In this document: one piece after another, positions 3,553 to 64,000 of the stretch
How the letters are laid out: each line of letters opens with the position of its first letter
How positions within the stretch are numbered: the stretch's first letter is position 1
Virus record (IMG/VR): IMGVR_UViG_3300033995_001164
Location: 245,178-309,177 of that record
Length of the DNA: 64,000 nt
Reading direction: 5' to 3' (one strand)
Notes under the pieces: model-generated
What the model was told of the DNA's origin: nothing
Database searches by the model: none
The model's input: only the letters and a program-made list of their open reading frames with translations
Made by a program: the position numbers and the translations under genes

Positions 3553-3801
3553 TTACCAAATCTGATTAGCAGCACCTCGGGTTAATCCAGTTTGCCATTT
3601 TTGACCTGATTTCATTAGTGGATTTGCTTTACCTCGAGTTAATGTATATGTATCTTCCCATTTAGGTATTGACCCTCCACCACCTCCAGATGAGGGAGTT
3701 GATGCCGCAGCATCGTCTTGTTCTTCCATTTCTTCCCTTGGTTCACTATCTGAAGTGTATTTTTTAAAGAAGTCGATAAGTGCATTAATATCTCTAACCA
3801 T
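3553..3801 (-). CDS. hypothetical protein
   Basis: 82 aa with a duplicated W-x4-L-TRG-x-AN motif. Confidence 0.65.
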   Translation of the reverse strand: MVRDINALIDFFKKYTSDSEPREEMEEQDDAAASTPSSGGGGGSIPKWEDTYTLTRGKANPLMKSGQKWQTGLTRGAANQIW

Positions 3802-3833
3802 TTTTAATATTTTTTTGTTATTTAAATAAATAG

Positions 3834-4142
3834 TTAATAAAACTCATTTTTTGGTAATTGGAGTGGGTTAATTAAATAATATTCATTTAAGAATATGATT
3901 AGTTCATCTTCATCTAATTCGATTGTCTCATGTTCAAAAATTCCCCCTTCAAAATCGTCCTCATCATCTCCGAAAAAATCGAATGTTTCTGTGACAAGGT
4001 CAAATCCGTATTCCTCAACAATACTATAATCGATTGTGTCATTTCTTAACACATCTTCTTCATCATCTATAGTTCTAAATGATACCTCAATCATATTAGT
4101 CTCTCCGTTCAAATAATATGATATAATTTCTTTAATTTCCAT
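3834..4142 (-). CDS. acidic hypothetical protein
   Basis: ORF track; likely start MEIKEII at 4142. Confidence 0.65.
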   Translation of the reverse strand: MEIKEIISYYLNGETNMIEVSFRTIDDEEDVLRNDTIDYSIVEEYGFDLVTETFDFFGDDEDDFEGGIFEHETIELDEDELIIFLNEYYLINPLQLPKNEFY

Positions 4143-27908: not shown

Positions 27909-29625
27909 TTAACGACCTTTAATCATTGAAATCCCGTGTTTTAAGAATTCTTTTGCCCGCGGGGACACATGATTCATTAAATAAACCTTTTCAATGTCTT
28001 TAACTAATTCCTCCCCATGCTCATTTTCTTTATAAAGTTCAATAATTTTATCCATCGCTTTATTACATTCTTTTTTTGTTTCGTCAAAATAGTTGTAAGG
28101 TTTGAATGATTTAAGATGGTTCATGATTTCTGATGCCAGATGTTCACCACCATCAGAAACTTTTGGATGCAATCTAAGTGTTTTCAATAGTTCTAATCTA
28201 TCAACTAAACCATTAATACCGTTTTTCCTAATTGACACTCCCTCAATATAATCTTCCGCGTCGTCATCTCCCATAATCTCGTCTAATGACCTAACATTTC
28301 CACCATGGCAGAATTTTCTATCTTCTTTTTCTTCAGATTGTTCCATCATGTAAAGTTTTTTGATGGATTTAATTTCTGATTCTGTAATTGTAAATCTTTT
28401 AGTTCCCATATCTATAAATATAATGATAAATATATCGTTACTTCGTAAGTTTAAAATTAAAATAAAATAACTCCTTGTTGGAGAGGTTATCTTTTAATAT
28501 AATTTTTGAGAATCATTGAAAAGTCTTTTCATTTTAGATTCAATTAAATTTATTTTTTCTTGGTCCGAGTCGGAAACTTCAAAATTCTCCGCCTTAATTT
28601 GTCTCACTTCTTCTTGCATTCTTTGATATCTCATTATCATATCATTATACAATCTTGCCTTTTCGTCTTGGGTTAAATTTGCCATAGTTTTGTGTTTTTT
28701 TATAAATGTATAATTATTTCTTAAATTGTAATTAGTTATTCTCTTTTTTATGTTTTTTCCATTCTAACCAAAACGCAACCATAACTAAAATATTCATTCC
28801 ACAAGATGCAATAATTTCATAAATGTCTTTATATAGATTCATTGTTAGATGAACGTGACCAACAACCCAAAATGGAACTGCCAAATTGGAACCTACCCAA
28901 ACAATAAGATATTTAAGGAATCTTATATTGTTATTTATCATTTCGTTCAATTATATTAAAGTCAGTATCATACATTCTGTACCTAAAACCAGTATTGTCG
29001 TTATTGATACCAATATAAGGTAATAATTTTCTAATATGATGGTCAATTAAATAATATTGGTCTAATTGAAATTTATCCCAATAATTATCTCTATTTACTT
29101 CAGGGTCATTCAAATAAATGTCTAAAATTAACCAATCACTTGTAATACTACTTTCACTTTCAAAATAATGAACATCTATATTTCCAATAACAGGATATAT
29201 GTTTTTTATAATATCACTATTGAGTAGTTTTTGTAATGATTTTCTTTGATTTATATCTATCATATGTAATATTCTATTGTGTTAACAGGTATCTTGAAAG
29301 TTTCAACAAACCATTCTTTAAATCCTTCTTTCCAATTATCATTAAAATAACCTTCTAATGAGTTAAGAAGTCCTTGGTCTTCAACATACAACATTGGACT
29401 TAATGGTTTTCGGTAATCTGATGCTCCGGTCCAATAGTCTTCACCATATAACCTGAACAATGTTTCATCATCCATATAATCACCTAAATAAAATTCAATT
29501 GCGTCTTGTTCCTGACCCCAATCATCAGTTAAACGAGTCCAATTAATATTTTCAATATCCAAAGTGTTGTTTAGGTAATTTTTAACCGTTTGATTTAATT
29601 TACTTTCTGTTATAATGTATTTCAT
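27909..29625 (-). CDS. five small genes (27909-28409, 28494-28685, 28732-28950 membrane, 28931-29263, 29260-29625); first and last carry ITE leaders
   Basis: ORF track; MGTKRFTITESE and MKYIITESKL. Confidence 0.6.
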
Positions 29626-29634
29626 AATTTACTT

Positions 29635-29852
29635 AATTTGTATTGTTCCTCCACCAGACTTTTTTTTCCGAAATAAATCAATGTGGGTTGTTGTCACCTC
29701 CAATTTGTAATGTTCCTCCACCTTTTTCCTTTTTCGATGTAACGCAAAAGCGTTGTTGTCACCTCCAATTTGTAATGTTCCTCCACCAATAAACACGGCT
29801 CAAATATTCATCAATAGTTGTTGTCACCTCCAATTTGTAATGTTCCTCCACC
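29635..29852 (-). CRISPR. CRISPR-like array beginning inside the 3' end of gene 29759-30106
   Basis: Three identical 36-bp repeats GTTGTTGTCACCTCCAATTTGTAATGTTCCTCCACC (29687-29722, 29752-29787, 29817-29852) plus a partial copy at 29635-29655; unique spacers of 31, 29 and 29 nt. Confidence 0.85.
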
Positions 29853-30106
29853 CACGCTTTCGTTAGGTCTTCTATTTCCTCATTATTTAACTCAAAAAAG
29901 GATTTCAAAAATGACCAAATATGAGTATAAGAGACATGAGCAACCCCATTTTTTTCATTATAGTCAAACATAACTTCACCATCTTTCATAAAGAATATGT
30001 GGTTAGGGTATTCGTCTGTTTTATATGGTTTCAAATCACCATATTCGGTGTTAAGGTATTTGAGAATACCTCGATTTTTTTGACTTTCTGTTATAATGTA
30101 TTTCAT
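29759..30106 (-). CDS. ITE-leader protein whose C-terminus is encoded by repeat plus spacer
   Basis: ...WVEEHYKLEVTTT (repeat) IDEYLSRVY (spacer) WWRNITNWR* (next repeat, shifted frame). Confidence 0.8.
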   Translation of the reverse strand: MKYIITESQKNRGILKYLNTEYGDLKPYKTDEYPNHIFFMKDGEVMFDYNEKNGVAHVSYTHIWSFLKSFFELNNEEIEDLTKAWVEEHYKLEVTTTIDEYLSRVYWWRNITNWR

Positions 30107-32392: not shown

Positions 32393-33421
32393 TCAATCAA
32401 CATTATTTTTTAAATATTTTTCAACAAATTTTTCTTCATATCTTTTTGTAAAAATAATTTGTTTTGTTTCATACAATTCTTTTAATTTTTTAGACGATAA
32501 ATTAGGTGTATCTCTTAATTTGTATGTAAGATTATTTTCATCACAAAATTTAATTGCCGATATTTTTTTTCTAACCACCGAATCACTATACCAAAGTTTT
32601 TTTGGCTTAATTTCTATTAAATATTTGTTTTTTAATATAAAATCAGCGGTATAAGTTCTGTTATTACCTTTATAATCAGTATAATTTATCTGATACATAT
32701 TAGATTCTGCATTAATCCACTCAATGTTATTTTTTTCAATAACATTAATCATGTATGATAATTCTTTAATACTTCTAAAAAACCAATTATTATACCATCC
32801 TGACCAACCATTACCGGAACCAACAGGACTTGGTTTTCCAAACATTGGGTTATTCTCTCCCGAACTATTTTTAGATTGTTTTATTTTTAATTGTTCTAAT
32901 TTAACATTAGCAATTTCGGTTCCATATTTTTCAACCCAAACATCATAGACAGATTTTCCAAACATAGGGTTATTCTCTCCTGAAGTATTTTTAGATTGTT
33001 TTATTTTTAATTTTTTCATTTTTTCTTCCGCAACTTCAACTCCATATTTATCAACCCAATAATAATAATAAGTAGAGTCCCCAAACATAGTGACATTACT
33101 TAATGATAAAATTCTCATTTTTTCCCTAAATTCTTCTGTTTTATATACTGAAAAATCTTTTTTTTCTCTCATTTTTTGTTTGGTGTCTTCAGTATGTTTT
33201 TTATTAAAAAATGGATTTAACTCACCAAATTTTCCAAACATAGGGTTATTGTCGCCAAGAACTCGTTGTTTCATACGTTCTCTCCTATCTTCGGTTATAG
33301 TTAATTTTAACCCACAACTTTTACAATTACTATTTTTGTTATCCGCTTTTATCATATTGTATTTGTTAGTGTAACTTATTGTTACACCACAAATAGGGCA
33401 TTTTCTTGTGAGATTTGACAT
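32393..33421 (-). CDS. homing endonuclease: zinc finger, NUMOD3 repeats and TnsA-like PD-(D/E)xK nuclease
   Basis: CPICG..CKSC; GENNPMFGK repeats; FRSIKEL, YTADF, IEIKP. Confidence 0.8.
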   Translation of the reverse strand: MSNLTRKCPICGVTISYTNKYNMIKADNKNSNCKSCGLKLTITEDRRERMKQRVLGDNNPMFGKFGELNPFFNKKHTEDTKQKMREKKDFSVYKTEEFREKMRILSLSNVTMFGDSTYYYYWVDKYGVEVAEEKMKKLKIKQSKNTSGENNPMFGKSVYDVWVEKYGTEIANVKLEQLKIKQSKNSSGENNPMFGKPSPVGSGNGWSGWYNNWFFRSIKELSYMINVIEKNNIEWINAESNMYQINYTDYKGNNRTYTADFILKNKYLIEIKPKKLWYSDSVVRKKISAIKFCDENNLTYKLRDTPNLSSKKLKELYETKQIIFTKRYEEKFVEKYLKNNVD

Positions 33422-44361: not shown

Positions 44362-45315
44362 CTAATTAATTTTAACACCCTTCTCAAGTGTTTCCTCAAG
44401 ATAATCTATAAAAGCTTTTGTTCTATCTTCTTTACCGTGATAATAATTACCATAACCTATTAGTTCTCCACTTTGGTCTGGTAATGGTTTTATTTCTTTT
44501 ACACCATTCTCAATTATATCACCAATCCAATCAACAACGACCTCATTCAATTTTTTTGTTTTTTTAACTCCATTTTTAATCACACCATCAATTCTTCCTT
44601 TGTGTTGATATACATCATAGTAAGTTTCATTAACACCCTTGTCAATCACCTTATCAATTATGTCTTCTCCCACATATTGTCGTGGGTTAGAACTTTTAAC
44701 ACCATTTTCAAGTGCATCATCAATGTCTCCGGTATATTCACGAGATTCTAATTTTGAAGTCATTTTCACTCCATCTTGTATGACAATTTCAATAACACAA
44801 GAACCATCCATTTGTAATGATTTGTTGGTTAGTTTCACCCCTTTAGTTTTCTTCACACCATCTTGTATGATGTCATCAACCTCACCTTCAGTAATGTTCA
44901 TTTCCAAACAGGTTTCTTTTACTCCGCCTTTAATAACATTTTCAACCCAACTTGTATTATCTTCCGGGTTCCAACAAGTTTCTTTAATCCCATTCTCAAA
45001 AACCTCCATCAGATTATATGATGGTGTTTGAGATGGTGACGCGGTATTCTTAGAACCATTCATTACATTATCTTCTACCCATTTTGTGATGAGGTGTTGG
45101 TTTTGAACAACCTCCAATGAGGCATACCCAAAAAGATTTTTAAAGAAATTAAAATTATACCACAGGGTTTTACTTTCAGTTAATTCTATCACCCATTGTT
45201 TGGACTCCGTAAAGATTAACCAAGTGGAACCATTATGATTATATGTGTCAACACCTTGGACAGAAGAATTAATTAAGGTGTTTATTATTTTTCCCATAAT
45301 CTTTTTATTAGACAT
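44362..45315 (-). CDS. homologue of the 62683 family with about 9 degenerate ~22-aa C-terminal repeats
   Basis: N-terminal WLIF..KQWVIEL..LWYN domain, then [V/I]xxxxxxG[V/I]KxT plus ~10 variable residues. Confidence 0.75.
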   Translation of the reverse strand: MSNKKIMGKIINTLINSSVQGVDTYNHNGSTWLIFTESKQWVIELTESKTLWYNFNFFKNLFGYASLEVVQNQHLITKWVEDNVMNGSKNTASPSQTPSYNLMEVFENGIKETCWNPEDNTSWVENVIKGGVKETCLEMNITEGEVDDIIQDGVKKTKGVKLTNKSLQMDGSCVIEIVIQDGVKMTSKLESREYTGDIDDALENGVKSSNPRQYVGEDIIDKVIDKGVNETYYDVYQHKGRIDGVIKNGVKKTKKLNEVVVDWIGDIIENGVKEIKPLPDQSGELIGYGNYYHGKEDRTKAFIDYLEETLEKGVKIN

Positions 45316-46127
45316 TATTTTTAAATATATTTGGTTGAATCTCAGCATCTTCAAAAGATTCTGTGGATACAAACTCACTTTTCAAATAATTAATTACATG
45401 TTCCATCATCTCGTAATCTTTAAAATCTCCGTTTTTATGTCCAGCCTTCATTAATAAAGACATACCCGCAGCCAACATCATTGTTGATTCCTTAACAGAT
45501 AATGCCTCTTGGTCTTTTGGGAATCCAATGTCAAAGTAGTTTCTATCGTTTTCACGTCTCCACGTTACACCAATTGTTAATCCATCCATTTGTTTCTTTT
45601 TTATTTGACAAAGATACGAATATTATTTTATATTTCCAAAAAAGTATGAGCAATAAAAAACCCACTGATTTGTGATAGGATTAATAATCCAATAAGATTC
45701 TTTGTATTCATAGCACACAAATCCCTCAATGGAATTATTTAGAACTTTATTAATTAACTTTTTCAAACAGTTCAAAGAATTTATCCTTATTGTTTTTTTC
45801 AGGGGGGAATATAAATGACTGAACATGGAATGATACAAATCCCATCTCACTACCGTAAGTCATTTTAAAATAATCATTAATCTCCGTACTATATTCATGT
45901 TTACTTTTCTTCATTCCATTGTGGTTATCAAAATGGATGTCAACTCCAACCAAATATTTATATATCGGGGAGAAGTTTATTGGGTCATATATAATTTGTT
46001 CCCTATATCCTGTGGAAACAACATCAATAATCTCGGGGCACATCTTCAGTATGACAACCTTTAATGTATCGGGGACTTCAATTTTCTTATCGTTCGGGGA
46101 TGGAAATAAAGTATCTTCATTTTTCAT
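45308..46127 (-). CDS. three hypothetical proteins (45308-45589, 45623-45850, 45750-46127)
   Basis: ORF track. Confidence 0.5.
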
Positions 46128-46177: not shown

Positions 46178-46240
46178 GGGTTGGGATTCCATCGAACGAA
46201 GTGAGTGACCGGACGAAGTGAGTGACCGGACGAAGTGAGA
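46178..46240 (-). repeat. dispersed intergenic element, copy 1 of 5, with an internal 17-bp tandem repeat
   Basis: GGGATTCCATCGAACGAAGTGAG core; other copies at 48545-48585, 49996-50030, 50579-50620, 51362-51402. Confidence 0.9.
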
Positions 46241-46648: not shown

Positions 46649-46773
46649 AATGAATATACCTTATGGAATAAAAGTATAATTCTAATTTATGGTTATGTCA
46701 AATAAAAAACCCCAAATCTAATTAAAGAAATGGGGTATGTTTAAAAACATATTGGTAACATTTTTTTTTTGTG

Positions 46774-47058
46774 TTTAAATTGTAATGATTCCCAACTTGC
46801 TCCCCTGTTAGAGTTAAAATGTTATGTTGTGACTATCTTTCAAATTGTGATGATTCCCAACTTTGAATTTCGTTGAGGCTAACTTACAGCGGTTGCGACT
46901 ACCTTTCAAATTGTGATGATTCCCAACTCAAAATGTTATTCAATTGGGGATTTTATGTTGTAACTACCTTTCAAATTGTGATGATTCCCAACCCTATTAA
47001 CGAGGTTTATATCGGTGTCCTCGTTGTGACTACCTTTAAAATCGAGACACATCCCAAT
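46774..47058 (-). CRISPR. CRISPR array associated with the TnpB/Cas12-like gene
   Basis: Consensus (+) GTTGTGACTACCTTTCAAATTGTGATGATTCCCAAC at 46826-46861, 46892-46927, 46957-46992; half-degenerate copies at 47023-47058 and 46774-46796; spacers 29, 30, 29 and 30 nt. Confidence 0.92.
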
Positions 47059-47255
47059 AATGGCTTTTCAAATGAAATTGTGATAGTCTATCCGTTCTCG
47101 GATAATGAGGTTTTGAGACCCCTAGCCGCCTAACCGTTCCGGCAATCACACGTTGACCGTGTTCTTTTACCCGGGTTATATCTGCATACAGTGTTTTAAC
47201 CTTTTAACGTGTTACACACACGCGAGTTACCAATATGTTTAAGAACTTTTTTATT
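47059..47255 (-). ncRNA. putative omegaRNA/tracrRNA-like scaffold
   Basis: Non-coding and GC-richer; hairpin 47089-47104; 47141-47150 reads UGUGAUUGCC on minus and can pair with repeat GGUAGUCACA. Confidence 0.7.
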
Positions 47256-47261
47256 ATGATA

Positions 47262-47269
47262 CAAAGATA
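47262..47269 (-). promoter_or_regulatory. TATCTTTG box driving the scaffold and array
   Basis: 5 nt after the nuclease stop codon, pointing into the non-coding region. Confidence 0.7.
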
Positions 47270-47274
47270 AGTAA

Positions 47275-48477
47275 TTATTCTCTAACTAACAAACTTTCTC
47301 TGATATTTTTTGCTGCGTTTATATCTCTATCGTGGTGTTCCTCACAAGACTTACAGGTCCATTCCCTTTGGGATAACTTTAACTCAGTATTTATATCCCC
47401 ACAGTTAGAACAAGTCTTACTTGTATTACGGGGGTCAATCCTATTAAATTCAATTCCTTTTGAATTACAAACACTTCCCAAATAATCGACAAATGAACGA
47501 ATCCCGATTCTTGCAGTGGATTTAGCCATATGTTTATTCTGTAACATAAATGACAAACGAATATCCTCAACTTGTATTTTAGAAAACTTACCTTTAGTTA
47601 AAACACCAACAACATATCTGTGATATTCTTTTCTAATATTATTTAATTCATTCTGTAATCTACCCTTCTTCTCAATTACTCTCCAATAATTTTTGGATTT
47701 AGGTTTACCCTTGTTTAATCTGTTCTTACGAGATATACTCTTTTGAATAATTGAAATCTTATCTTCCAATTTTTTAATCCTCTCAATTGGTACCTGATAT
47801 TTAAGTCCTTCGGATGTAATTGCCATATCTTTAATACCTACATCAATTCCCAATGATTTACCCGAACTATTAATCTTAACAATTTCAGTATCCTTTAAAT
47901 CCAATGTTAAAGATAAATACCAATTACCATCAGACTTCCTATGGATTGACATTAACTTTGGTGTAGACCCTTTGAATTGTTTATGAAACTTACATTTTAT
48001 AATTGGATTTATCCCAACTTTTTTAAGTAAAGTAGGAGCAAACCTAATTTCATTATTATCCCAATCCAAACTTAAACTTCCACGACTAATACTATTTGAA
48101 TTAGTCGTTAATTTCAATATATTCGTTTTTTTCTTATACGAAGGTTTTCTTGATTTTGGTTTTTTTCTGAAATTTTTAATTGATGTGACCAAAGATTCAG
48201 AAACATATTCCCTAAATATTGATGGAACATTATCAAACCAATTAATCGTTGAAAGATAATTAGAGAAAAGAGATTTACTCTTTAAGTTCGGAGCAGGAAA
48301 GTCCTTAAAATCTTTCCCATCAATAAATTCACTAACCAAAAGATTATATCCCCCTCTTAATTTATTACCAATATCAAATAACCATCTCTTTTGTTTATCA
48401 TCCGGGTATATCCTATACTCAACTGATACTCCAACATAAGATGGACCCTTTTTTCTTTCAACCAAAAAATGATTCAT
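47275..48477 (-). CDS. tnpB: TnpB/Cas12f-like RNA-guided nuclease, 400 aa
   Basis: YRIYP N-terminus, RuvC-I GIDVG, RuvC-II VED, zinc finger CSNC/CKSC, RuvC-III DRDINAAKNI; start 48477 follows TATATTTG at 48497-48504. Confidence 0.93.
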   Translation of the reverse strand: MNHFLVERKKGPSYVGVSVEYRIYPDDKQKRWLFDIGNKLRGGYNLLVSEFIDGKDFKDFPAPNLKSKSLFSNYLSTINWFDNVPSIFREYVSESLVTSIKNFRKKPKSRKPSYKKKTNILKLTTNSNSISRGSLSLDWDNNEIRFAPTLLKKVGINPIIKCKFHKQFKGSTPKLMSIHRKSDGNWYLSLTLDLKDTEIVKINSSGKSLGIDVGIKDMAITSEGLKYQVPIERIKKLEDKISIIQKSISRKNRLNKGKPKSKNYWRVIEKKGRLQNELNNIRKEYHRYVVGVLTKGKFSKIQVEDIRLSFMLQNKHMAKSTARIGIRSFVDYLGSVCNSKGIEFNRIDPRNTSKTCSNCGDINTELKLSQREWTCKSCEEHHDRDINAAKNIRESLLVRE

Positions 48478-48598
48478 ATATAATTTATTTAGAAAGCAAA
48501 TATAAAACAAAGAATTCAAATCACCAAATATATAATGAAAAAAAGGAATGGGATTCCCTCGAACGAAGTGAGAAACCGGACGAAGAGCACTATACGAA

Positions 48599-49929
48599 TT
48601 ACTCATCAGCAGGGATATTATTTAACCAATTATTAAAATATTGTGAAGTATCCACATGATTTAATCCAAATAGTTTTCTTATACTATTGTATAACTCAGA
48701 CTTCATAGATATTTTACTAACACTATGTGGTCTCGAACCAACCTTAACTCCATTCACAATATAATAATAACTAAACATCTTAAACGCCCTCTCAAAATGG
48801 TTACTCTCTTTCGATACCGATAAGGTGGGGTTATCACCAACAATAGAATTAAGATATTCATGAACCAATTTTTCCATTATGTTGTTTCATTAATATCGGA
48901 CATCACATAACCTTCAGGTGGAAAATGAACCAAACATCTTCCACTCTCTTTATAACAAGTACAATCCAATTCATCATCAATCTCAAATGAAGCACTGCTC
49001 ACCTTATCTTCGTAATTTGTGAAGAAATCATTAAAGATTCCCGTAATGGTCATTTTCTTTTTCACCTTACTTATTTTTTGAATAGTGAAACCCTTTGAGG
49101 GTCTATTGTTATCACAATGTTATTACTTGAATCCGCATACGAAGCAATGTCATCATCCAATAACATTTTATGGATATTATCATCATAATAAATCACCACA
49201 TCATTGTATGAGTAATGTGGGTAATGATTTTTGATTGGTTCCAATAGAACAACATCAGTACATTGACTAATGGCACCGTCCATAATGGATTTAATTAGTT
49301 CATAATAATATTGATTTCGGTTTTTCTTATACTCGTTCAATATATCAATTCGAGATAAGGGTTCAGTTGTTTTTGGTTTGGAGTTCCACATCATTTTTTA
49401 CTATTTCTATTAATTTTTTAAGACATTACATATTAAAGCTAACAATGGTAATGATAAGAGTAATAATGAAATTACTAACCCCCAATAATCTTTTATTTTT
49501 TGCATATTTCTATTAATTTTTTAAGTTTTGCTTCTTAACAATTTCTATCAACTTGACCAAACATTCAAGTTCTGCTTCTTCGTAAGTTTGAAAAAAAGTA
49601 TCCCATATTAATCCGCCTATTCTAAAATCACTATTATATTCAGTGATATTATCTTGGATATACCAACAATAAGGTTGTTGATATTTGTTTTCTTTAGTAA
49701 TCCAACTATCTAAATTATACTTCTCTCTAAACCATCTAAATGCTTGTTGGTAAAGTGGTGCTACAAATGTTGTTTTAGATTCTAATCTAAATTGAAAAGG
49801 AGCAGATATAGTTTCATTTGATATATAAACCTCTCTATCTTTACCTACATAATATCCTAAACAAGGTTCATCAAATCCTAATTCTTTTAAAGCTAATGCT
49901 TGTTCGTAAGGTATAAATTCTTTTTCCAT
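48599..49929 (-). CDS. four hypothetical proteins (48599-48877, 48877-49065, 49071-49394, 49513-49929)
   Basis: ORF track; 49513 has LKELGFDEPC..APLYQQAFRWFREKY..YEEAE. Confidence 0.6.
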
Positions 49930-57589: not shown

Positions 57590-58153
57590 TTAATAGAATG
57601 TTTTTAATTTCATGTATGGTTCCAAATTATATTTGTCTATAATCTGCTTGAAGATTTGTTGTCTGTTTCTTAAACCCAATATGTTTTTTTTACTAATAAA
57701 TCCATAACCGAATCCTGAATCACCACTTAACCCCACAACTTTATAATATGTTTGGTCATGAAGGTTTGTCGGATATAATCTTGCTGTAAACTTGTAAATC
57801 ATATTGTCTTTTGACCCGAATCTAAAATCCCCTAATTCTTTTTCATCACGATGTAGTGGTCGTGAATTATTGTTTAGTCCAAGTTTTTCAACCAACGCGT
57901 CATGTATATATAACGCCATTTTGTCTGTCGACATATAAACAAGTGGTGTGTGAGTATCCTCACTAAACCCCATAATATCACCATCATAAAGAACCTTTAT
58001 TAAATTATCAATCCCGCCCATTAGTTTGGATGTAACCGCCATCCCTGATTGTTTTAACATGGATTTTAGCGCATCTTTTTTTAATTCGGACTGTTCGTTA
58101 ATAACCCCGCCCATTATCTCGTGTATCCTATGTATGTTCTCTTGTAAGTTCAT
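57590..58153 (-). CDS. 'LQENIHRI' leader protein
   Basis: MNLQENIHRIHEIMGGVINE. Confidence 0.65.
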   Translation of the reverse strand: MNLQENIHRIHEIMGGVINEQSELKKDALKSMLKQSGMAVTSKLMGGIDNLIKVLYDGDIMGFSEDTHTPLVYMSTDKMALYIHDALVEKLGLNNNSRPLHRDEKELGDFRFGSKDNMIYKFTARLYPTNLHDQTYYKVVGLSGDSGFGYGFISKKNILGLRNRQQIFKQIIDKYNLEPYMKLKTFY

Positions 58154-58159
58154 ATTATC

Positions 58160-58247
58160 TTAATTTGTAATGTTCCTCCACCTAATTAAAACGGTATAAA
58201 ATCCATAGTTTGTTTCCGTTACCCTTAAATTATAATGTTCCTCTATC
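58160..58247 (-). CRISPR. single-spacer CRISPR-like unit at a gene 3' end
   Basis: 36-bp repeat 58212-58247, 29-nt spacer 58183-58211, partial repeat 58160-58182 matching the 29.7-kb repeat. Confidence 0.65.
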
Positions 58248-59515
58248 CATTCCTTTGTTAGGTCCCGAATTTGTTTCCATTCCATACCAAACATTGATTG
58301 TAAATATGACCAAATCTCATCATAACTAACATAAACCTCCCCATTTTTTTTATTGTAGTCAAAAACTACTTCATCACCTTTTCTATAATAAATAAAATTG
58401 CGATGTTTTTTAGTTTCAAATGGTATTAAATCACCATACTTATCGTTTAACCATTTCTTGGCAATGTTATTTAATTTACTTTCGTTAATAACCCCCATCA
58501 TCGATTGGATTCTATGTATATTCTCTTGTAAACCCGGTTGTTTTAAATGATTGAATTTAAACTCTATCTTCGCCCCTTTTGGGTCTTGTGGTGTCCATCT
58601 AAATCTCTTACCGATATAATCTTTTAATTCACCCCTCATTTTGATTTTGATTGCGTCTTCCACCTTGGTTGGATTAAGATTAGGGATTTCCCCCTTTAAG
58701 TAGTTCTGTGGTGTATATACCTGTGTGTTGTTTTCTCTTTTAAATACATCATACACATCTATATTAACAATGGCGTTATCATCACCCACCTCTATATTCC
58801 TTACTTTGAACTTTATGTTTGTGTTTGGAACCATTTGTTCCGGGTCTTGATTCCAATAATTGTATGTCTTGGCTGTCTTCTTTCTCTTTGTTAAATCAGG
58901 TTCGATTGTTTTTAATTTCTTTACCTTATTCTTCATTATATCATCATGACTATATCCCCGCTCCAATAGTTTCATCTCATCAGGAGTTAATGTATATACA
59001 CTATCGAATGTATCATCACCCCATCCCACAGGATTGGCATTACTTATTTGTCTACTTGTGGATGAAGAATAATTTTTTGTTACCTCATACCATTTATCAT
59101 CTTTGAATATGTAAATAGGGTACCACCCGTATGATACAACTTTATAGTATGGAGTTCCTTTTGGGTCTTCGGACCAATATCCCTCTAAATTTGAACCTCT
59201 GAATGGTAATTGAGCTATTGTGTATAGTTTCGCCTTTGGATTTGATATAACCTTCCCACTTTGTTTTCTTGGGTCAACAAAGTTTTCCTTCGTTAAGTTT
59301 GAGTAGTCCCCATCTTTTCTAAAGTTTAATACATACAACTCCAAAATATATTGCTCGAATCCTTTAGGTATTCCCATATATGGCGCAAAATTCTTGATGG
59401 CTTCTAATAAAGATGCTCTTGTTCTATTCTTTTTCTTCTCCACATCTAACAACTTGAATAATTTGGAAATTACTCTTAGTGATGGCTCATTGGATTGTTC
59501 TGCTAATCTTATCAT
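58160..59515 (-). CDS. fusion protein ending in a 29759-like domain with one repeat-spacer unit
   Basis: Internal LQENIHRIQSMMGVINES; C-terminus WIEEHYNLRVTET-NYGFYTVLI-RWRNITN*. Confidence 0.75.
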   Translation of the reverse strand: MIRLAEQSNEPSLRVISKLFKLLDVEKKKNRTRASLLEAIKNFAPYMGIPKGFEQYILELYVLNFRKDGDYSNLTKENFVDPRKQSGKVISNPKAKLYTIAQLPFRGSNLEGYWSEDPKGTPYYKVVSYGWYPIYIFKDDKWYEVTKNYSSSTSRQISNANPVGWGDDTFDSVYTLTPDEMKLLERGYSHDDIMKNKVKKLKTIEPDLTKRKKTAKTYNYWNQDPEQMVPNTNIKFKVRNIEVGDDNAIVNIDVYDVFKRENNTQVYTPQNYLKGEIPNLNPTKVEDAIKIKMRGELKDYIGKRFRWTPQDPKGAKIEFKFNHLKQPGLQENIHRIQSMMGVINESKLNNIAKKWLNDKYGDLIPFETKKHRNFIYYRKGDEVVFDYNKKNGEVYVSYDEIWSYLQSMFGMEWKQIRDLTKEWIEEHYNLRVTETNYGFYTVLIRWRNITN

Positions 59516-59777
59516 TATTGATAAATATATGGTCAATAGAAAACCTCCTCGTCGATAATAAGGTTCCGGACTTATATTGTGGGTTTATAAGTCTCAGGAC
59601 TTATATGGTTTTTATCATATAATGAGGAATATATGTCTTTTATCATATATTACACATTTTGGTAATATTATGAAGAACACTTATTATAATCTATCATATG
59701 GTCCGGGGCGTCAATCCCCTACCCCTTTTTTTGTTTATTCATTTCTTTTTTATATCTTTGCCGACAAATATAATACT

Positions 59778-60092: not shown

Positions 60093-60641
60093 ATGACAGA
60101 TAAACTAAAGCATAGAATCATTAACTACCTAAATAAAGAATATTCCGGGATTGTTGATTATGAAACGGATGATTGGAAAGAGCATATATTCTTTATGAAA
60201 GACGGGAAAGTTCTTAATTATTACAGTAAAATAAATGGGGTTGTTTATATCTCTTATTCTAAAATTTGGTCATTATTAGAAACCTTTTTTGGATTAAATT
60301 ATCAGGAAGTACAAGACCTAACAAAAATATGGGTGGAGGGGCATCACAGATTTAAGGTAACAACAACGGTCGAAGAAAGAGGAGAATTGATTGACTTGGT
60401 GGAGGAACATCACAGATTAAACGTAACAACAATCGTGCCGAATTGCTTTGTTCACTGGGACAAGGTGGAGGAACATCACAGATTAAACGTAACAACAACA
60501 AGACATGACCGTTATGGAAATGTTACACCGGAGGAACTTCACAAATTAAAGTCAACAACAACCTTCGGTTGTTTTATCGTTGATTTACCTTTGGTAGAAA
60601 ACCATTACAAATTAAACTACCCCGCTAACGGTGAAATATGA
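60093..60641 (+). CDS. 29759-family protein with a translated repeat-spacer tail
   Basis: Units VEEHHRLNVTTT plus 9-10 variable residues. Confidence 0.8.
   Translation: MTDKLKHRIINYLNKEYSGIVDYETDDWKEHIFFMKDGKVLNYYSKINGVVYISYSKIWSLLETFFGLNYQEVQDLTKIWVEGHHRFKVTTTVEERGELIDLVEEHHRLNVTTIVPNCFVHWDKVEEHHRLNVTTTRHDRYGNVTPEELHKLKSTTTFGCFIVDLPLVENHYKLNYPANGEI
60332..60617 (+). CRISPR. in-frame CRISPR-like array
   Basis: 36-bp repeats at 60332, 60398, 60464, 60527 and a partial at 60593; spacers 30, 30, 27 and 30 nt. Confidence 0.75.
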
Positions 60642-60725
60642 TTATTAAGTGAGTAAATCTTTGCCATTAGTACCTTTTAATGGTACTTTGAGCATAAATT
60701 TACTCTTAATGATTTCTTTGTATTT

Positions 60726-61430
60726 ATGGATATGATAAAAAACAAATTAACTATTGTAATCCCCTCTAAGAATGAGAGTGAGATTATAGACAAAACACTT
60801 ACATTAATTAATAAACAATTTGGTATTTATAAAACTCGTGTGATTATTGCTGATTGTTCTGATGATAATACCCGGGACATTATACTATCAGGTAAATACC
60901 CAAGATTAAGGATTGAAATCATTGATGGTGGACTACCGAGTGTTGCAAGGAATAACGGAGCTGAATTAGTTAAAACTCCTTATGTTTTATTCTTGGATGC
61001 TGATATCTTTTTAATGTCCCCATTCATAATATCTAACACATTTAACACCATTAAAAGTAAAGACCTATATCTTCTTACCACTAAGTTTAGAGTTGAAGGA
61101 GTTTATTCATTTGTCTTCCCGGTGTTTGAGTTCTTTAGGGATTTAACAATTAAGACATCCCCTTGCGCTATTGGTGGATTTATGTTATTTAAAATGTCTG
61201 AATTTAATCTTCTTGGTGGTTTTAATAATGATGATAAGTTTGCTGAAGATTTTCATCTTAGTATGAAAGTTAATCCCCTCCGGTTTGGCGTGTCTAATGA
61301 GAAAGTATATACAACCGATAGACGATTTAAAAAGAAAGGATTATGGTATATGATTAAAATGGCGTATCTCTCTAATAAAAATAAACATAACCCCGACTTC
61401 TTTAAAGATGACCACAACTATTGGATATAA
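60726..61430 (+). CDS. family 2 glycosyltransferase
   Basis: IVIPSKNE, SDDNT, ARNNGA, LFLDAD, AEDF. Confidence 0.9.
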   Translation: MDMIKNKLTIVIPSKNESEIIDKTLTLINKQFGIYKTRVIIADCSDDNTRDIILSGKYPRLRIEIIDGGLPSVARNNGAELVKTPYVLFLDADIFLMSPFIISNTFNTIKSKDLYLLTTKFRVEGVYSFVFPVFEFFRDLTIKTSPCAIGGFMLFKMSEFNLLGGFNNDDKFAEDFHLSMKVNPLRFGVSNEKVYTTDRRFKKKGLWYMIKMAYLSNKNKHNPDFFKDDHNYWI

Positions 61431-62127
61431 ATGCGTTGTACTATCCGACTTACATTTAGGTATGGTCGATAGTAAACCTAAAAAGATTCTTGAGTTCCTT
61501 GAGTCTATTGAAACTGACCTTCTTATCCTTAACGGAGATATTGTTGATATTGATGCCATTAATCGTGGGAGTAAATGGAAGAATAAACATATGAAGGTAA
61601 TCATTAAACTATTGGATATGTCCCGCAATACCGAGATTATCTATATTAGAGGGAACCACGATAATGATGTAAAAGACCTATATTCTTCCGGACTTGGGAA
61701 CATTAAGTTTATGGATGAATATATCTATAGTGTTGAAGATAAAAAGTATCTTGTCTTTCACGGTGATAAAATTGATATCACAACCAAATATAAATTTCTT
61801 ACACAGATTGGTTCCATTGGATATGACTTCGCTCTTCGTCTTAATACTTGGTACAACAAGTATAGAGAACTCACCGGAAAACCATACTATAGTATCTCTA
61901 AAGTAATTAAAGAAAACTTTAAGAAAGCTCTGTCATTTATAAATGACTTTGAGATTAATGCCTGTGATTATGCAAGTACTCTTAATTGTGATGGTGTCAT
62001 CTGTGGTCATATTCATATCCCGGGCATTAAAGAAATAAACGGAATCAAATATTATAACTCCGGTGATTGGGTTGAGAACTTCTCCGCTCTTGTTCTTACT
62101 AAGGACAATGAATGGAAATTAATCTAA
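61408..62127 (+). CDS. LpxH-like (UDP-2,3-diacylglucosamine hydrolase family) metallophosphoesterase
   Basis: SDLHLG, NGDIVD, GNHD, FHGD, CGHIH, NSGDWVE. Confidence 0.85.
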   Translation: MTTTIGYKCVVLSDLHLGMVDSKPKKILEFLESIETDLLILNGDIVDIDAINRGSKWKNKHMKVIIKLLDMSRNTEIIYIRGNHDNDVKDLYSSGLGNIKFMDEYIYSVEDKKYLVFHGDKIDITTKYKFLTQIGSIGYDFALRLNTWYNKYRELTGKPYYSISKVIKENFKKALSFINDFEINACDYASTLNCDGVICGHIHIPGIKEINGIKYYNSGDWVENFSALVLTKDNEWKLI

Positions 62128-62171
62128 TAGTATTTCTTTGTATTATAAATTATTCTTTATATCTTTGCCTC

Positions 62172-62696
62172 ATGGAAATAGATTTATCAAAATATAGTAT
62201 TGGGGAACTTATTGAATTACAGGACAAGATTGATAATACAATACATAACTACAAGGATGGTTATTTGTATATCTGTAATGTTCGTTCATATGGTCACAAT
62301 TGGAGAGACAATTGTATTCATAACATTCATACTCTTCAGCGACTTTGTCATAAGTATGGTGGTGAGGATGGTATTGTTGATGTCTATTCTAATAACCCCG
62401 ACCTTTCTATGATTGAGAACTATGGTGACCTTATGTATATCGTCTCCGAGTCCGACTATACTAAGTGGAAAGATTATGAATATCTTAAAGGTTTTATCCC
62501 CACCATTTCTAAACGATTGGATGAATGGGAGAATAGAGATAATATTCCTTTTCACTCTCGACCATCGTTTGCTCCGATGTATAGTAGAGAAGAGTTAAAT
62601 AATATGGTGGAAAAACTTGCTCACTATGATATGTCTTTTGTTGCTCCCACCCCTTATAAACCGAATGAAAATTTAGACACAGATGATTACAGATAA
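62172..62696 (+). CDS. hypothetical protein
   Basis: Start MEIDLS after the TATCTTTG box. Confidence 0.6.
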   Translation: MEIDLSKYSIGELIELQDKIDNTIHNYKDGYLYICNVRSYGHNWRDNCIHNIHTLQRLCHKYGGEDGIVDVYSNNPDLSMIENYGDLMYIVSESDYTKWKDYEYLKGFIPTISKRLDEWENRDNIPFHSRPSFAPMYSREELNNMVEKLAHYDMSFVAPTPYKPNENLDTDDYR

Positions 62697-63207
62697 ATTT
62701 AAAAGAACAATTTTTGATAAATTAACCGATGACCTATCTCATGTGGAATTGATTTTCTACAATGACTCCCTTTGGTTTATTAACCGAGAAAAGAAGTATT
62801 GGTATTTGGAATTAGAAAAATCAGGTAAATTATATTGGAGATGGCAATTCTTTACTAATTTTTTCTCTCCATTCACAATGGAACGAAATGAATATGAACC
62901 ACTTATAAAAGAATGGGTAGAGTCAGCATTAAATTGCGGGGTTACAACAACAGTAAACAAGGATTCAATCGCCGGATGGACGGTAGAGTCAGCATTAAAT
63001 TGCGGGGTCACAACAACTCAAATAGGCACCATCAAAAAACTGAAATGGGTAGAGTCAGCATTAAATTGTGGGGTGACAACAACGTTGTTGATGAAATTCC
63101 ACCAAAAACTATTGGTAGAGTCAGCATTAAATTGTGGGGTGACAACAACAGTACCATCTAAGTTATCCGTTGCAATAAAGGTGGAGTCAGTATTAAATGG
63201 ATTATAA
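62683..63207 (+). CDS. protein with a translated repeat-spacer tail
   Basis: Four units of VESALNCGVTTT plus 10 variable residues. Confidence 0.85.
   Translation: MITDKFKRTIFDKLTDDLSHVELIFYNDSLWFINREKKYWYLELEKSGKLYWRWQFFTNFFSPFTMERNEYEPLIKEWVESALNCGVTTTVNKDSIAGWTVESALNCGVTTTQIGTIKKLKWVESALNCGVTTTLLMKFHQKLLVESALNCGVTTTVPSKLSVAIKVESVLNGL
62916..63200 (+). CRISPR. in-frame CRISPR-like array
   Basis: GGTAGAGTCAGCATTAAATTGYGGGGTBACAACAAC at 62916, 62982, 63048, 63114 and a partial at 63180; four unique 30-nt spacers. Confidence 0.85.
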
Positions 63208-63272
63208 TCTCTTATTTATCCCGAGGAGTTATATCCCCACCCCTTATAAACCGAATGAAAATTTAGATACAG

Positions 63273-63734
63273 ATGATTACAGATAAATTTAAAAGAACAA
63301 TTTTTGATAAATTGAGTGAAGATTTATCCCATGTTGAGATAATATCATACCGTGATTCCTTTTGGTTTATTAACCGAGAGAAAAAATATTGGTATTTGGA
63401 ATTTAAATCTTCAGGCGAACTATATTGGAGATGGCAATTCTTTATTGAATTTTTTGAATTATTCACGATGGAGAGAAACCAATTCGAGCCAATCATATTA
63501 GAATGGGTAGAGAAAGTATTAAACCATGAGTTAATAACAACTGAAATCAATATTGGTAATCATGTAGGTATCGAAGAAGTCCTAAATGGCGGAGTGAAAA
63601 CATCGTATAGAGCAAATAAAGACGGATTTTTGGTGAGTTATATATTAAAGAAAGGTGTCACGGCAACCATTAGTAATCATATACGTGGTCTCAAATGTGT
63701 GGAGGAAATATTAAATAATGGAACAACAATATGA
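63273..63734 (+). CDS. paralogue of 62683 with decayed 21-22-aa repeats
   Basis: Near-identical N-terminus; VEKVLNHELITT, IEEVLNGGVKTS, VSYILKKGVTAT, VEEILNNG. Confidence 0.8.
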   Translation: MITDKFKRTIFDKLSEDLSHVEIISYRDSFWFINREKKYWYLEFKSSGELYWRWQFFIEFFELFTMERNQFEPIILEWVEKVLNHELITTEINIGNHVGIEEVLNGGVKTSYRANKDGFLVSYILKKGVTATISNHIRGLKCVEEILNNGTTI

Positions 63735-64000
63735 TTACAGATAAACTAAAACAATTTATTTTTAATAAATTAACCGATGACCTATCTCATGTGGAATTGA
63801 TTTCATATGAAGATTCCTTTTGGTTCATAGATAGAGAAAACAAATATTGGTATTTGGAATTTCAAAAGTCCGGCAGATTATATTGGAGATGGGGATTTTT
63901 TTCCAATTTTTTCCAATTATTTTGTATGGAAAGAGATGAATATGAACCACTTATCACCGAATGGGTGGAGTCAGTCCTAAATGGTGGGGTAACAACAACA
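63731..64000 (+). CDS. third paralogue, truncated by the window end; first repeat at 63964-63999
   Basis: MITDKLKQFIFNKL...EWVESVLNGGVTTT. Confidence 0.8.
   Translation, partial: MITDKLKQFIFNKLTDDLSHVELISYEDSFWFIDRENKYWYLEFQKSGRLYWRWGFFSNFFQLFCMERDEYEPLITEWVESVLNGGVTTT

What the first reader, a model, noticed from the sequence alone, without database searches (positions are those of the whole stretch)
60332..60617. Second in-frame array in a different paralogue family
Seen: repeats GGTGGAGGAACATCACAGATTAAACGTAACAACAAC, sharing CATCACA with the TnpB-array repeat. Spacers are 30, 30, 27 and 30 nt, all multiples of three and stop-free. With the 62.9-kb array that makes 8 of 8 frame-preserving spacers, against 2 of 8 in the other arrays (29, 30, 29, 30; 31, 29, 29; 29). 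A rough random-composition estimate for eight stop-free 10-codon inserts is about 1e-3. This suggests selection on the translated product.
Basis: partly seen in the sequence, partly recalled or inferred. Interest (0 to 1): 0.75.

Follow-up and report, generated by a model that had tools for sequence, protein, structure and literature searches.

The report
Translated CRISPR-like arrays in phage genes
The 3' end of a small gene of a 309-kb lake phage is a CRISPR-type array (36-nt repeat, 30-nt spacers copied from other DNA, probably added by the host's spacer-integration enzymes) that is also kept open as part of the protein, a dual use I found no description of.

Summary
Window 60332-60628 holds five copies of a 36-nt repeat separated by 30, 30, 27 and 30 nt, all inside ORF 60093..60641 (182 aa).

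The repeat encodes the last 12 codons of a ~98-aa domain. That domain defines a large family of proteins in aquatic phages, with at least 12 paralogues in this phage.

Across 45 arrays from 40 metagenomic loci and this genome, three things hold:
- **Growth is polar.** New units appear next to the domain, while distal spacers are shared between relatives.
- **Spacers are mostly 30 nt**, with 29 nt next most common.
- **The frame is kept open.** 60 of 65 unique 30-nt spacers are stop-free in the gene's frame, against 57% in the other five frames (P = 5e-10).

So there is real selection for an open frame. The units themselves, however, are CRISPR-type insertions:
- Three spacers of this phage occur in non-array contexts in a lake metagenome, one inside a bacterial-type topoisomerase IV/gyrase A gene.
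- Two of those three carry the Flavobacterium type II-C/VI-B acquisition motif TTTANNNNN on the leader-facing side.
- A sister array's repeat is 25/36 identical to the F. columnare VI-B repeat.
- The phage has no Cas1.

Best reading: host adaptation machinery extends integration-competent pseudo-CRISPR arrays embedded in phage genes. Function is unresolved. I rate it a new variant of a known kind, with high interest.

The parts
60093..60641 (+). Family gene of 182 aa: N-terminal domain followed by the in-frame array
   Evidence: ORF listing. An identical protein is seen on 42 contigs, and 160-aa and 138-aa variants lack one or two units.
60093..60386 (+). N-terminal alpha/beta domain (about residues 1-98); its last helix and strand are encoded by repeat 1
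   Evidence: AlphaFold2 pLDDT is 93-98 for residues 1-110. There is no PDB fold match and only uncharacterised relatives in AFDB. There is no Pfam or PHROG hit. 264 representative clusters are related.
60332..60628 (+). The array of the finding. Repeats R1-R5 start at 60332, 60398, 60464, 60527 and 60593. Spacers are S1 60368-60397, S2 60434-60463, S3 60500-60526 and S4 60563-60592. The distal repeats are degenerate.
   Evidence: S2 is found in a non-array context in run X23, with TTTANNNNN upstream. The unit R2-S2 is absent in L007-L009 and in run X23.
62683..63207 (+). Paralogue of 174 aa with an in-frame array: repeats from 62916, four 30-nt spacers, terminal half repeat at 63180
   Evidence: The differences between repeat copies are all synonymous third positions. 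Spacers S2 (63018-63047) and S3 (63084-63113) are found in non-array contexts in X23. The S2 context aligns with bacterial topoisomerase IV/gyrase subunit A.
29622..30106 (-). Paralogue ORF 29759..30106 plus an array of three identical repeats and a terminal half repeat; spacers are 29, 29 and 31 nt, and the frame is lost after repeat 1
   Evidence: Repeat 2 is read as WRNITNWR followed by a stop.
58144..59536 (-). 458-aa ORF whose C-terminal part is a family domain, followed by one 29-nt spacer and a terminal half repeat
46761..47059 (-). The 'TnpB array': five repeats (37/36 nt) with 28-30-nt spacers, out of frame and followed by a terminator-like hairpin. Its repeat is the most similar to Flavobacterium VI-B repeats.
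   Evidence: It is 25/36 identical to the F. columnare CRISPR-2 repeat, reached by 0 of 20,000 shuffles.
47060..48606 (-). TnpB-only IS-like insertion (TnpB ORF 47275..48606, G+C-rich structured 3' region 47060-47275) that separates a family domain from its array
   Evidence: PHROG transposase hit at 1.7e-68. See also the sequence.
48599..48877 (-). Probable truncated family domain that ends at the conserved W just before the place of repeat 1
   Evidence: Weak profile match of 8-9 bits, aligned up to profile position 80. Inference.
44362..45381 (-). Diverged paralogue with ten degenerate 22-aa repeats (motif hh..[ND]GVKxT)
   Evidence: The motif is conserved with synonymous codon variation.
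63273..64000 (+). Two further tandem paralogues: 63273..63734 with degenerate repeats, and 63731..64000, which runs off the contig

Best explanation
The array is a CRISPR-type array that sits inside a coding sequence.

**Anatomy.** The last 36 nt of the domain-coding part of a phage gene (read as V-E-E-H-H-R-L-N-V-T-T-T) serve as the repeat. The coding sequence upstream of it plays the part of the leader.

**Growth.** New 66-bp units (one repeat copy plus a spacer of about 30 nt) are inserted at the domain-proximal end. The phage has no Cas1. The ruler (36 + 30), the repeat ends, the polarity and the acquisition motif all match the type II-C/VI-B adaptation module of Flavobacteriia. I therefore infer that the host's Cas1-Cas2 complex (with Cas9) does the inserting during infection, using fragments of whatever DNA is in the cell, the host chromosome included.

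**Why it stays in frame.** Since 36 + 30 = 66 = 22 codons, most insertions keep the frame. Insertions that introduce a stop or a 29-nt spacer are removed by selection, or tolerated mainly at the last position. The array is therefore translated as a tail of alternating constant 12-aa helices and arbitrary decapeptides.

**Shown and inferred.** Shown: the anatomy, the polarity, unit gain and loss between strains, frame selection, the foreign origin of three spacers, and absence of Cas1. Inferred: that the host adaptation complex is the inserting enzyme, and the benefit to the phage.

**Most likely benefit.** My preferred guess is an integration decoy. Many copies of an integration-competent leader-repeat on the replicating phage genome would draw spacer integration away from the host's own arrays. 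The repeats have lost the crRNA hairpin, so they are unlikely to work as guides.
For: **Regular 36+30 structure and degenerate distal repeats:**

**Polarity**
- The distal spacer CAGGAGTTCGG... is shared by eight loci, while the proximal spacers are unique.
- L049 equals L044 plus two proximal units; L052 equals L050 plus one.
- P0157, P0158 and P0018 share the last spacer.

**Strain variants of this very array**
- Forms of 182, 160 and 138 aa occur with flanks 99-100% identical (L007 and L008 identical over 1.2-3.3 kb on each side; the shorter L006 and L009 at 99.1-99.6% upstream).
- The 160-aa form also shows up as a 66-nt joint in run X23.

**Foreign origin**
- In X23, contigs contain exactly A60-S2, A62-S2 and A62-S3 (31-32 nt) between unrelated, mutually dissimilar flanks.
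- The open frames of those contexts are +2, +1 and -1 relative to the array.
- The A62-S2 context aligns ungapped with bacterial topoisomerase IV/gyrase subunit A, 15/30 identical and 23/30 similar. The phage has no such gene.

**Match to Flavobacterium adaptation**
- PMC8092290 reports 36-bp repeats, new spacers of 28-32 bp (mostly 30), GTTGT at the leader-distal repeat end, PAM TTTANNNNN facing the leader, and many self-derived spacers.
- Here the repeat ends in ...ACAAC, which is GTTGT on the other strand.
- Two of three protospacers have TTTA at positions -9 to -6 on the domain side, P = 4e-4 to 1e-3.
- The sister array's repeat is 25/36 identical to the F. columnare CRISPR-2 repeat (PMC5395568, Table 4), reached by 0 of 20,000 shuffles; for the 62.9-kb array it is 20/36.

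**Other support**
- No Cas1 and no reverse transcriptase in the phage.
- Spacer G+C is 0.39 against 0.32 in the flanking phage DNA.
- Frame selection.
- Protein-level constraint on old repeats.
Against: - No prokaryotic genome among 185,579 species holds an array with the family's invariant 11-mer at this spacing. No host array with the same repeat is therefore known, and the host itself is not identified.
- The finding's own repeat is only 18/36 identical to the Flavobacterium VI-B repeat.
- Only three protospacers were seen, each as one contig in one run, and they could not be fetched. Four spacer cores had no second match in IMG/VR, and there were none in cultured phages.
- The topoisomerase assignment rests on a 30-aa match with database E-values of 0.1-1.
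- Subfamilies with quite different repeats (ending in ...VTP...GVKxT) also form 22-aa arrays. That fits a mechanism tied to the family itself at least as well as one tied to a particular host.
- Long-term amino-acid conservation of the repeats is not explained by a pure DNA decoy.
Confidence: 0.62

Rival explanations
1. A purely protein-level feature. The tail is a tandem 22-aa repeat whose constant segments form a scaffold or recognition sites, and whose variable decapeptides are the functional, diversifying part. This would be a displayed peptide library or a multi-core precursor like cyanobactin or other RiPP precursors. CRISPR machinery plays no part.
For: - Open-frame selection.
- Amino-acid motif conserved with synonymous changes in old paralogues.
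- Hundreds of relatives have 2-7 in-frame units ending in a half repeat plus stop.
- Each constant segment is predicted helical.
- From my own knowledge: a conserved ~90-aa leader-like domain with many paralogues per genome recalls Nif11/NHLP-type precursors.
Against: - Neighbouring spacers between identical repeats are unrelated.
- Spacers are copied from other DNA in any frame or strand.
- 19% of spacers are 29 nt, and arrays persist out of frame with perfect repeats.
- Growth is polar and unit by unit.
- No modifying enzymes are consistently adjacent; this was looked at only in this window.
- The tail is modelled with low confidence, pLDDT 45-64.
Confidence: 0.12
2. Working RNA guides or RNA decoys. 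The mRNA tail is processed by the host's Cas13b (type VI-B) into crRNAs. These either re-aim the host effector or, like RNA anti-CRISPRs (Racrs), soak it up.
For: - In the gene's sense orientation the repeats read like VI-B repeats (G[GT]TGG...ACAAC). The 46.8-kb array is 25/36 identical to the F. columnare VI-B repeat.
- Viral repeat mimics and mini-arrays are known (PMC10651486; bioRxiv 10.1101/2024.10.29.618823).
Against: - The phage repeats lack the repeat hairpin. Host repeats fold at -10.9 and -12.2 kcal/mol (z -2.5 and -3.7). Phage repeats fold at -1.6 to -4.9 kcal/mol, no better than shuffles.
- Paralogues in one phage carry very different repeats.
- The three protospacers show no consistent antisense orientation to their genes.
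- No Rfam CRISPR-DR match.
- No RNA data could be obtained.
Confidence: 0.15
3. Accidental off-target ('neo-CRISPR') integration that is merely tolerated. The gene's 3' end happens to resemble a leader-repeat junction, and the units are neutral or slightly harmful scars with no use to the phage.
For: - The same evidence as for the best explanation regarding how units arise.
- A fifth of units break the frame.
- From my own knowledge: non-canonical integration that creates new arrays has been reported for E. coli Cas1-Cas2.
Against: - The trait is ancient, recurrent and widespread. 49 of 150 representative relatives show 22-aa periodicity, in several subfamilies and in both marine and freshwater samples.
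- At least six arrays occur in this one genome.
- Old repeats are kept at the protein level.
- A harmful mimic would be expected to be lost by synonymous changes.
Confidence: 0.1
4. Guide arrays of the neighbouring TnpB / a miniature type V system.
For: A 443-aa TnpB gene lies 215 nt upstream of the 46.8-kb array on the same strand.
Against: - Only one of at least six arrays is near TnpB.
- That array is preceded, beyond the TnpB element, by a truncated family domain ending exactly where repeat 1 should start. TnpB therefore looks like an IS inserted into a family gene.
- All other arrays start inside family genes.
Confidence: 0.01

Closest known systems
Type II-C / VI-B CRISPR arrays of Flavobacteriia (F. 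columnare; PMC8092290, PMC5395568)
   Same: - 36-bp repeat and spacers of 28-32 bp, mostly 30.
- Leader-distal repeat end GTTGT.
- Growth at the leader end and a degenerate terminal repeat.
- PAM TTTANNNNN facing the leader (2 of 3 protospacers here).
- Frequent host-derived spacers.
- The repeat of the 46.8-kb array is 25/36 identical to the VI-B repeat.
   Different: - The arrays lie on a phage, inside protein-coding genes and in frame.
- The 'leader' is coding sequence.
- There are no cas genes.
- The repeats have no hairpin and differ between paralogues.
- No identical repeat was found in any of 185,579 prokaryotic species genomes.
- Stop codons are selected against in one frame.
Virus-borne mini-CRISPR arrays and solitary repeat units, including RNA anti-CRISPRs (Racrs; PMC10651486) and viral crRNA-like RNAs (bioRxiv 10.1101/2024.10.29.618823)
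   Same: - Repeat-like elements without cas genes on viral genomes.
- They resemble host repeats and probably interfere with or exploit host CRISPR-Cas.
   Different: - The known elements are non-coding RNAs that keep the structure Cas proteins recognise.
- Here the repeats are codons of a conserved protein domain and lack that structure.
- Here the arrays keep growing and are translated.
Multi-core peptide precursors with hypervariable cassettes between conserved flanks (cyanobactin PatE-type; from my own knowledge)
   Same: A conserved N-terminal part is followed by repeated units. In these units the constant flanks are nearly identical in DNA, while the short cores are unrelated to each other.
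   Different: - Cassettes here come from foreign DNA in arbitrary frames.
- They often break the frame and are added in a polar way.
- No processing enzymes were identified.
Diversity-generating retroelements
   Same: They produce targeted hypervariation in the C-terminal part of a phage protein.
   Different: - No reverse transcriptase and no template repeat.
- Whole segments are replaced, rather than adenines being mutated.

Membership tests
CRISPR array (as a substrate of Cas1-Cas2 adaptation) | Direct repeats of fixed length separated by unique spacers of nearly fixed length | tested here: met
   36-nt repeats. Spacer lengths among 95 unique spacers: 30 nt (65), 29 (18), 27 (5), the rest 24-39 nt. 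Neighbouring spacers are unrelated.
CRISPR array (as a substrate of Cas1-Cas2 adaptation) | Polar growth at a leader end; old spacers shared at the trailer end; degenerate terminal repeat | tested here: met
   Unit gain and loss between near-identical strains.
CRISPR array (as a substrate of Cas1-Cas2 adaptation) | Spacers match sequences in other replicons (protospacers) | tested here: met
   Three spacers of this phage lie in non-array contexts in run X23, one in a bacterial-type topoisomerase IV/gyrase A gene. The sample is small, and the contigs were seen only as 30-nt flank consensus.
CRISPR array (as a substrate of Cas1-Cas2 adaptation) | Protospacer-adjacent motif of the acquiring system | tested here: inconclusive
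   TTTANNNNN sits on the leader-facing side in 2 of 3 protospacers, P = 4e-4 to 1e-3. The motif is taken from PMC8092290. Three protospacers are too few for a logo.
CRISPR array (as a substrate of Cas1-Cas2 adaptation) | cas1/cas2 in the same genome, or a host array with the same repeat | tested here: not met
   No Cas1 in the phage; the best match is 13 bits, below the cut-off. No related array among 185,579 species genomes. The host was not identified.
Type VI-B crRNA array / Racr-type repeat mimic | Repeat sequence close to a host repeat | tested here: inconclusive
   Identity to the F. columnare VI-B repeat: 25/36 for the 46.8-kb array, 20/36 for the 62.9-kb array, 18/36 for the finding's array, 17/36 (below the 18-match listing threshold) for the 29.7-kb array.
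Type VI-B crRNA array / Racr-type repeat mimic | Repeat folds into the hairpin bound by the effector | tested here: not met
   host repeats fold at -10.9 and -12.2 kcal/mol; phage repeats at -1.6 to -4.9 kcal/mol, no better than shuffles.
Type VI-B crRNA array / Racr-type repeat mimic | Transcribed and processed into small RNAs | not testable with these tools
   No RNA run was listed for this gene.
Translated protein tandem repeat | Open reading frame maintained through the repeats beyond chance | tested here: met
   60/65 against 57.5% expected, P = 5e-10. First spacers only: 26/29, P = 2e-4.
Translated protein tandem repeat | Amino-acid motif conserved while codons drift | tested here: met
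   The paralogue 44362..45381 has ten repeats of hh..[ND]GVKxT with varying codons for G, V, K and T. In the 62.9-kb array all differences between repeats are synonymous.
Translated protein tandem repeat | Units arise by duplication and divergence | tested here: not met
   Spacers next to identical repeats share no similarity and have foreign counterparts.
TnpB / type V guide array | Array functionally linked to the nuclease gene | tested here: not met
   Five other arrays have no TnpB. The element interrupts a family gene.
Diversity-generating retroelement | Reverse transcriptase and a template repeat | tested here: not met
   No RVT_1 match in the genome.

The most novel reading that the evidence does not exclude
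A family of phage proteins uses the host's CRISPR spacer-integration machinery as a diversity generator. Each integration event appends a new 22-residue module (a constant helix plus an arbitrary decapeptide) to the protein. CRISPR 'spacers' are thus routinely translated and selected as protein, and the same 36 nt serve both as a CRISPR repeat and as codons of a folded domain.
Probability: 0.25. Interest if true: 0.95.

Novelty: new variant of a known kind. Interest (0 to 1): 0.85.

Why it matters
If the reading holds, three things follow.

1. CRISPR adaptation complexes insert spacers into phage genomes in nature, at sites that are codons of a conserved phage protein. This happens often enough that strains differing by nothing else over kilobases differ in their arrays.
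2. It would give a candidate anti-adaptation strategy (integration decoys) that differs from the known protein and RNA anti-CRISPRs.
3. It would give a natural case in which spacer-sized pieces of foreign DNA are translated under selection for an open frame.

It also gives practical handles. The spacers record which DNA the phage met, so they link uncultured aquatic jumbo phages to hosts. The family is abundant in lake and marine metagenomes, so array turnover can be followed in time series.

For annotation, these loci will be called either 'CRISPR' or 'hypothetical repeat protein'. Both labels are half right.

Tried and rejected
- **Family and RNA databases.** Pfam and PHROGs gave nothing for the family. 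Rfam showed no family at gathering threshold and only a chance-level CRISPR-DR50 match, E = 9.4. No tRNAs.
- **Spacers against the phage's own genome and all fetched loci.** No second copies.
- **Spacers against cultured phages.** Nothing.
- **Spacer cores against IMG/VR.** Four scans returned only the phage's own record, so the protospacer-bearing contigs could not be fetched.
- **Scan of 185,579 species genomes** for arrays with the invariant 11-mer. Ten chance hits, none related.
- **IMG/VR relatives.** Mostly identical copies of this phage, so uninformative about turnover.
- **Broad domain alignment.** Too diverse for the locus finder.
- **Synonymous-site conservation of the repeat against the domain.** Not decisive, because the domain's codons are also conserved or biased in the sampled subfamily.
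- **Fold searches.** No known fold.
- **RNA runs.** None was listed.
- **Second protospacer context against phages.** No match.
- **Ideas considered and dropped:**
  - Giant-virus origin: no NCLDV capsid, and the record is a phage.
  - Ribosome-footprint or RNA origin of spacers: no reverse transcriptase.
  - In-frame capture from genes: only 1 of 3 spacers is in the source's frame.
  - Programmed frameshifting at 29-nt spacers: no slip site seen.

Full report
**What is there**

The window is the last 64 kb of a single 309,177-bp contig with 31.6% G+C. It is an IMG/VR virus record rated complete.

At 60332-60628 there are five copies of a 36-nt repeat, with spacers of 30, 30, 27 and 30 nt. The two distal copies are degenerate, at 70% and 60% identity. 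Everything lies in frame in ORF 60093..60641 of 182 aa.

**One family, not several**

The repeat is the DNA for the last 12 residues (V-E-E-H-H-R-L-N-V-T-T-T) of an N-terminal domain of about 98 aa.

- The genome has at least 12 paralogues of this domain.
- At least six of them carry arrays. These are the finding's array at 60.3 kb, the ones at 29.7, 46.8, 58.2 and 62.9 kb of the window, and one near the contig start.
- In the arrays with 29-nt spacers, the second repeat is read out of frame as W-R-N-I-T-N followed by a stop.
- The 'TnpB array' is preceded, beyond a 1.5-kb TnpB-only element, by a truncated domain that ends at the conserved tryptophan just before repeat 1 would start. TnpB is therefore an insertion into a family gene.

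**The family elsewhere**

- An exhaustive profile-free search finds 264 representative clusters.
- 49 of the best 150 show a 22-residue period.
- None has a Pfam or PHROG name.
- Many relatives end in the same out-of-frame W-R-N-I-T-N reading.
- AlphaFold2 models residues 1-110 with pLDDT 93-98 and the rest at 45-64, with a short helix at each constant segment.
- No solved fold matches. AFDB returns only uncharacterised relatives.

**How the arrays behave**

I collected 40 loci through the domain, not through the tail, from viral and metagenomic contigs. I walked their arrays together with those of this genome. This gave four results.

1. **Spacer lengths.** Among 95 unique spacers: 30 nt (65), 29 (18), 27 (5), a few others.
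2. **Polar growth.**
   - Trailer-side spacers are shared between loci; one spacer is shared by eight loci. Domain-side spacers are unique.
   - L049 equals L044 plus two proximal units. L052 equals L050 plus one.
   - The same holds for the proteins P0157, P0158 and P0018.
3. **Variation of the finding's own array between strains.**
   - Forms of 182, 160 and 138 aa exist, and their flanks are 99-100% identical: L007 and L008 are identical over 1.2-3.3 kb on each side, and the shorter L006 and L009 show 3-4 mismatches upstream.
   - The 138-aa form cannot be an assembly collapse, because its junction repeats share no 21-mer.
   - The 160-aa form is the only one in run X23.
4. **Persistence out of frame.** Arrays with perfect repeats continue for 2-5 units after a frame-breaking spacer or a stop (L051, L040, L010, window 29.7 kb).

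**Is the frame selected?**

Yes.

- In 65 unique 30-nt spacers the ORF frame holds 5 stop codons. Each of the other five frames holds 34-36.
- 60/65 are stop-free against 57.5% elsewhere, P = 5e-10.
- Taking only first spacers, which are always reached by the ORF, 26/29 are stop-free, P = 2e-4.
- The ORF-frame translation is compositionally closest to the phage proteome. Aspartate, for example, is 5.1% against 0.9% and 1.8% in the other frames.
- In the diverged paralogue 44362..45381, ten repeats keep the motif hh..[ND]GVKxT at 22-residue spacing with synonymous codon variation.
- In the 62.9-kb array all differences between repeats are synonymous.

The window alone gives only P of about 0.012.

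**Where the spacers come from**

- The spacers have no second copy in the phage.
- Their G+C is 0.39, against 0.32 for flanking phage DNA.
- Logan contigs of four lake runs were laid on the region. In run X23, contigs appeared that contain exactly A60-S2 (60432-60463), A62-S2 (63018-63049) and A62-S3 (63084-63114), between flanks that are neither repeats nor similar to each other.
- The only fully open frames of these contexts are +2, +1 and -1 relative to the array. Capture is therefore not in frame, and the open frame must come from later selection.
- The A62-S2 context aligns without gaps across flank, spacer and flank to a bacterial DNA gyrase/topoisomerase IV subunit A (NCBIfam NF009397), with 15/30 identical and 23/30 similar residues.
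- The phage has no such gene. The source is therefore probably the host chromosome.

**Link to a known adaptation system**

PMC8092290 reports the following for F. columnare:
- 36-bp repeats in both the II-C and the VI-B array.
- New spacers of 28-32 bp, mostly 30.
- GTTGT at the leader-distal repeat end.
- The motif NNNNNTAAA, which reads TTTANNNNN upstream in VI-B orientation, with the motif end of the spacer facing the leader.
- Many self-derived spacers in the VI-B array.

The arrays here compare as follows:
- The repeats are 36 nt and end in ...ACAAC.
- The growing end is the domain side.
- The nine bases on that side of the three protospacers are TTTATGGAT, TTTATTGCG and AAAAAAGCT. Two of three match at the exact position, P = 4e-4 to 1e-3.
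- The repeat of the 46.8-kb array is 25/36 identical, in the same orientation, to the F. columnare CRISPR-2 repeat listed in PMC5395568. None of 20,000 shuffles reached this.
- The 62.9-kb repeat reaches 20/36 and the finding's repeat 18/36.

Two observations limit the link:
- The phage repeats lack the hairpin of the host repeats.
- No array with the family's invariant 11-mer exists in 185,579 prokaryotic species genomes.

The phage has no Cas1 and no reverse transcriptase.

**Interpretation**

The simplest account is that the 3' end of these phage genes is an integration-competent leader-repeat for a Flavobacteriia-type adaptation complex.

- The complex adds 66-bp units from DNA present in the infected cell.
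- Because 66 is 22 codons, the gene stays open.
- Selection removes most units that close the frame.

Unit origin, polarity and frame selection are shown. The enzyme and the benefit are inferred.

Loss of the crRNA hairpin, together with retention of the repeat ends, points to a role at the integration step (a decoy for adaptation) rather than as guides. The long-term protein-level conservation of old repeats leaves room for a real function of the translated tail, including the bolder idea that the phage uses integration to diversify the protein.

**Limits**

- There are only three protospacers, from one run. They were seen only as 30-nt flank consensus and were not retrievable.
- The topoisomerase match is weak at database level.
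- The host is unidentified.
- There are no RNA or protein data.
- The literature searches were keyword-based. They found virus-borne mini-arrays, Racrs and crRNA-like RNAs, but no description of translated, in-frame arrays. That does not prove none exists.

Noticed in passing
window 47060-48606 (-): A TnpB-only IS-like element: a 443-aa ORF whose real start is probably near residue 44, plus a G+C-rich structured 215-nt 3' region that could be its omega RNA. It is inserted exactly at the junction between a family domain and its first repeat, so its guide-adjacent flank would be the array's first repeat.
   Followed up: partly
window 62878-63900: In all four lake runs, contigs join about 63864/63900 back to about 62880 ('goes back 980/1023'). 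The tandem paralogues at 62.7, 63.3 and 63.7 kb may therefore be arranged or recombined differently in part of the population, or this contig end may be mis-assembled. The last gene runs off the contig, and a further paralogue with an array lies at genome positions 3690-4049.
   Followed up: no
window 58160-59536 (-) and 57590-58153 (-): A recurring linker motif (Q-E-N-I-H-R-I-x-x-M-M-G) joins a larger N-terminal part to the family domain in the 458-aa ORF. It also opens the next ORF. Relatives such as P0022 chain several domains with the same linker, which suggests a modular multi-gene family.
   Followed up: no
window 59726-59762 and 62133-62169; also 60655-60670: A conserved upstream element ending in TATATCTTTGCC precedes several genes. 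It resembles the Bacteroidota -7 promoter motif TAnnTTTG (my own knowledge) and fits a Bacteroidota host.
   Followed up: no
window 46196-46239: A perfect 17-nt tandem repeat (2.6 copies, ACGAAGTGAGTGACCGG) in an unusually G+C-rich spot, just downstream of the 46.8-kb array and its terminator.
   Followed up: no
window 32834-33059: A 120-nt tandem duplication (1.9 copies, 83% identity).
   Followed up: no
window 60726-62127 (+): A family-2 glycosyltransferase and a calcineurin-like metallophosphoesterase with overlapping ends sit between the two in-frame arrays. No link to the arrays was seen.
   Followed up: no
arrays in general (e.g. window 58144-58179, 29622-29657; L010, L012, L024): The terminal half repeat runs straight into the start codon of the next gene (...AAATTAAGATAATATG...). 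Both the normal and the -1 reading stop within 1-8 nt of that ATG. Translational coupling to the downstream gene may be part of why the frame is kept.
   Followed up: partly
run X23 versus X1, X20, X24: The run in which the phage lacks unit R2-S2 is also the one where the S2 protospacer contig is prominent, at a depth above that of the phage. This is a single observation, and 121 loose ends were not shown.
   Followed up: no
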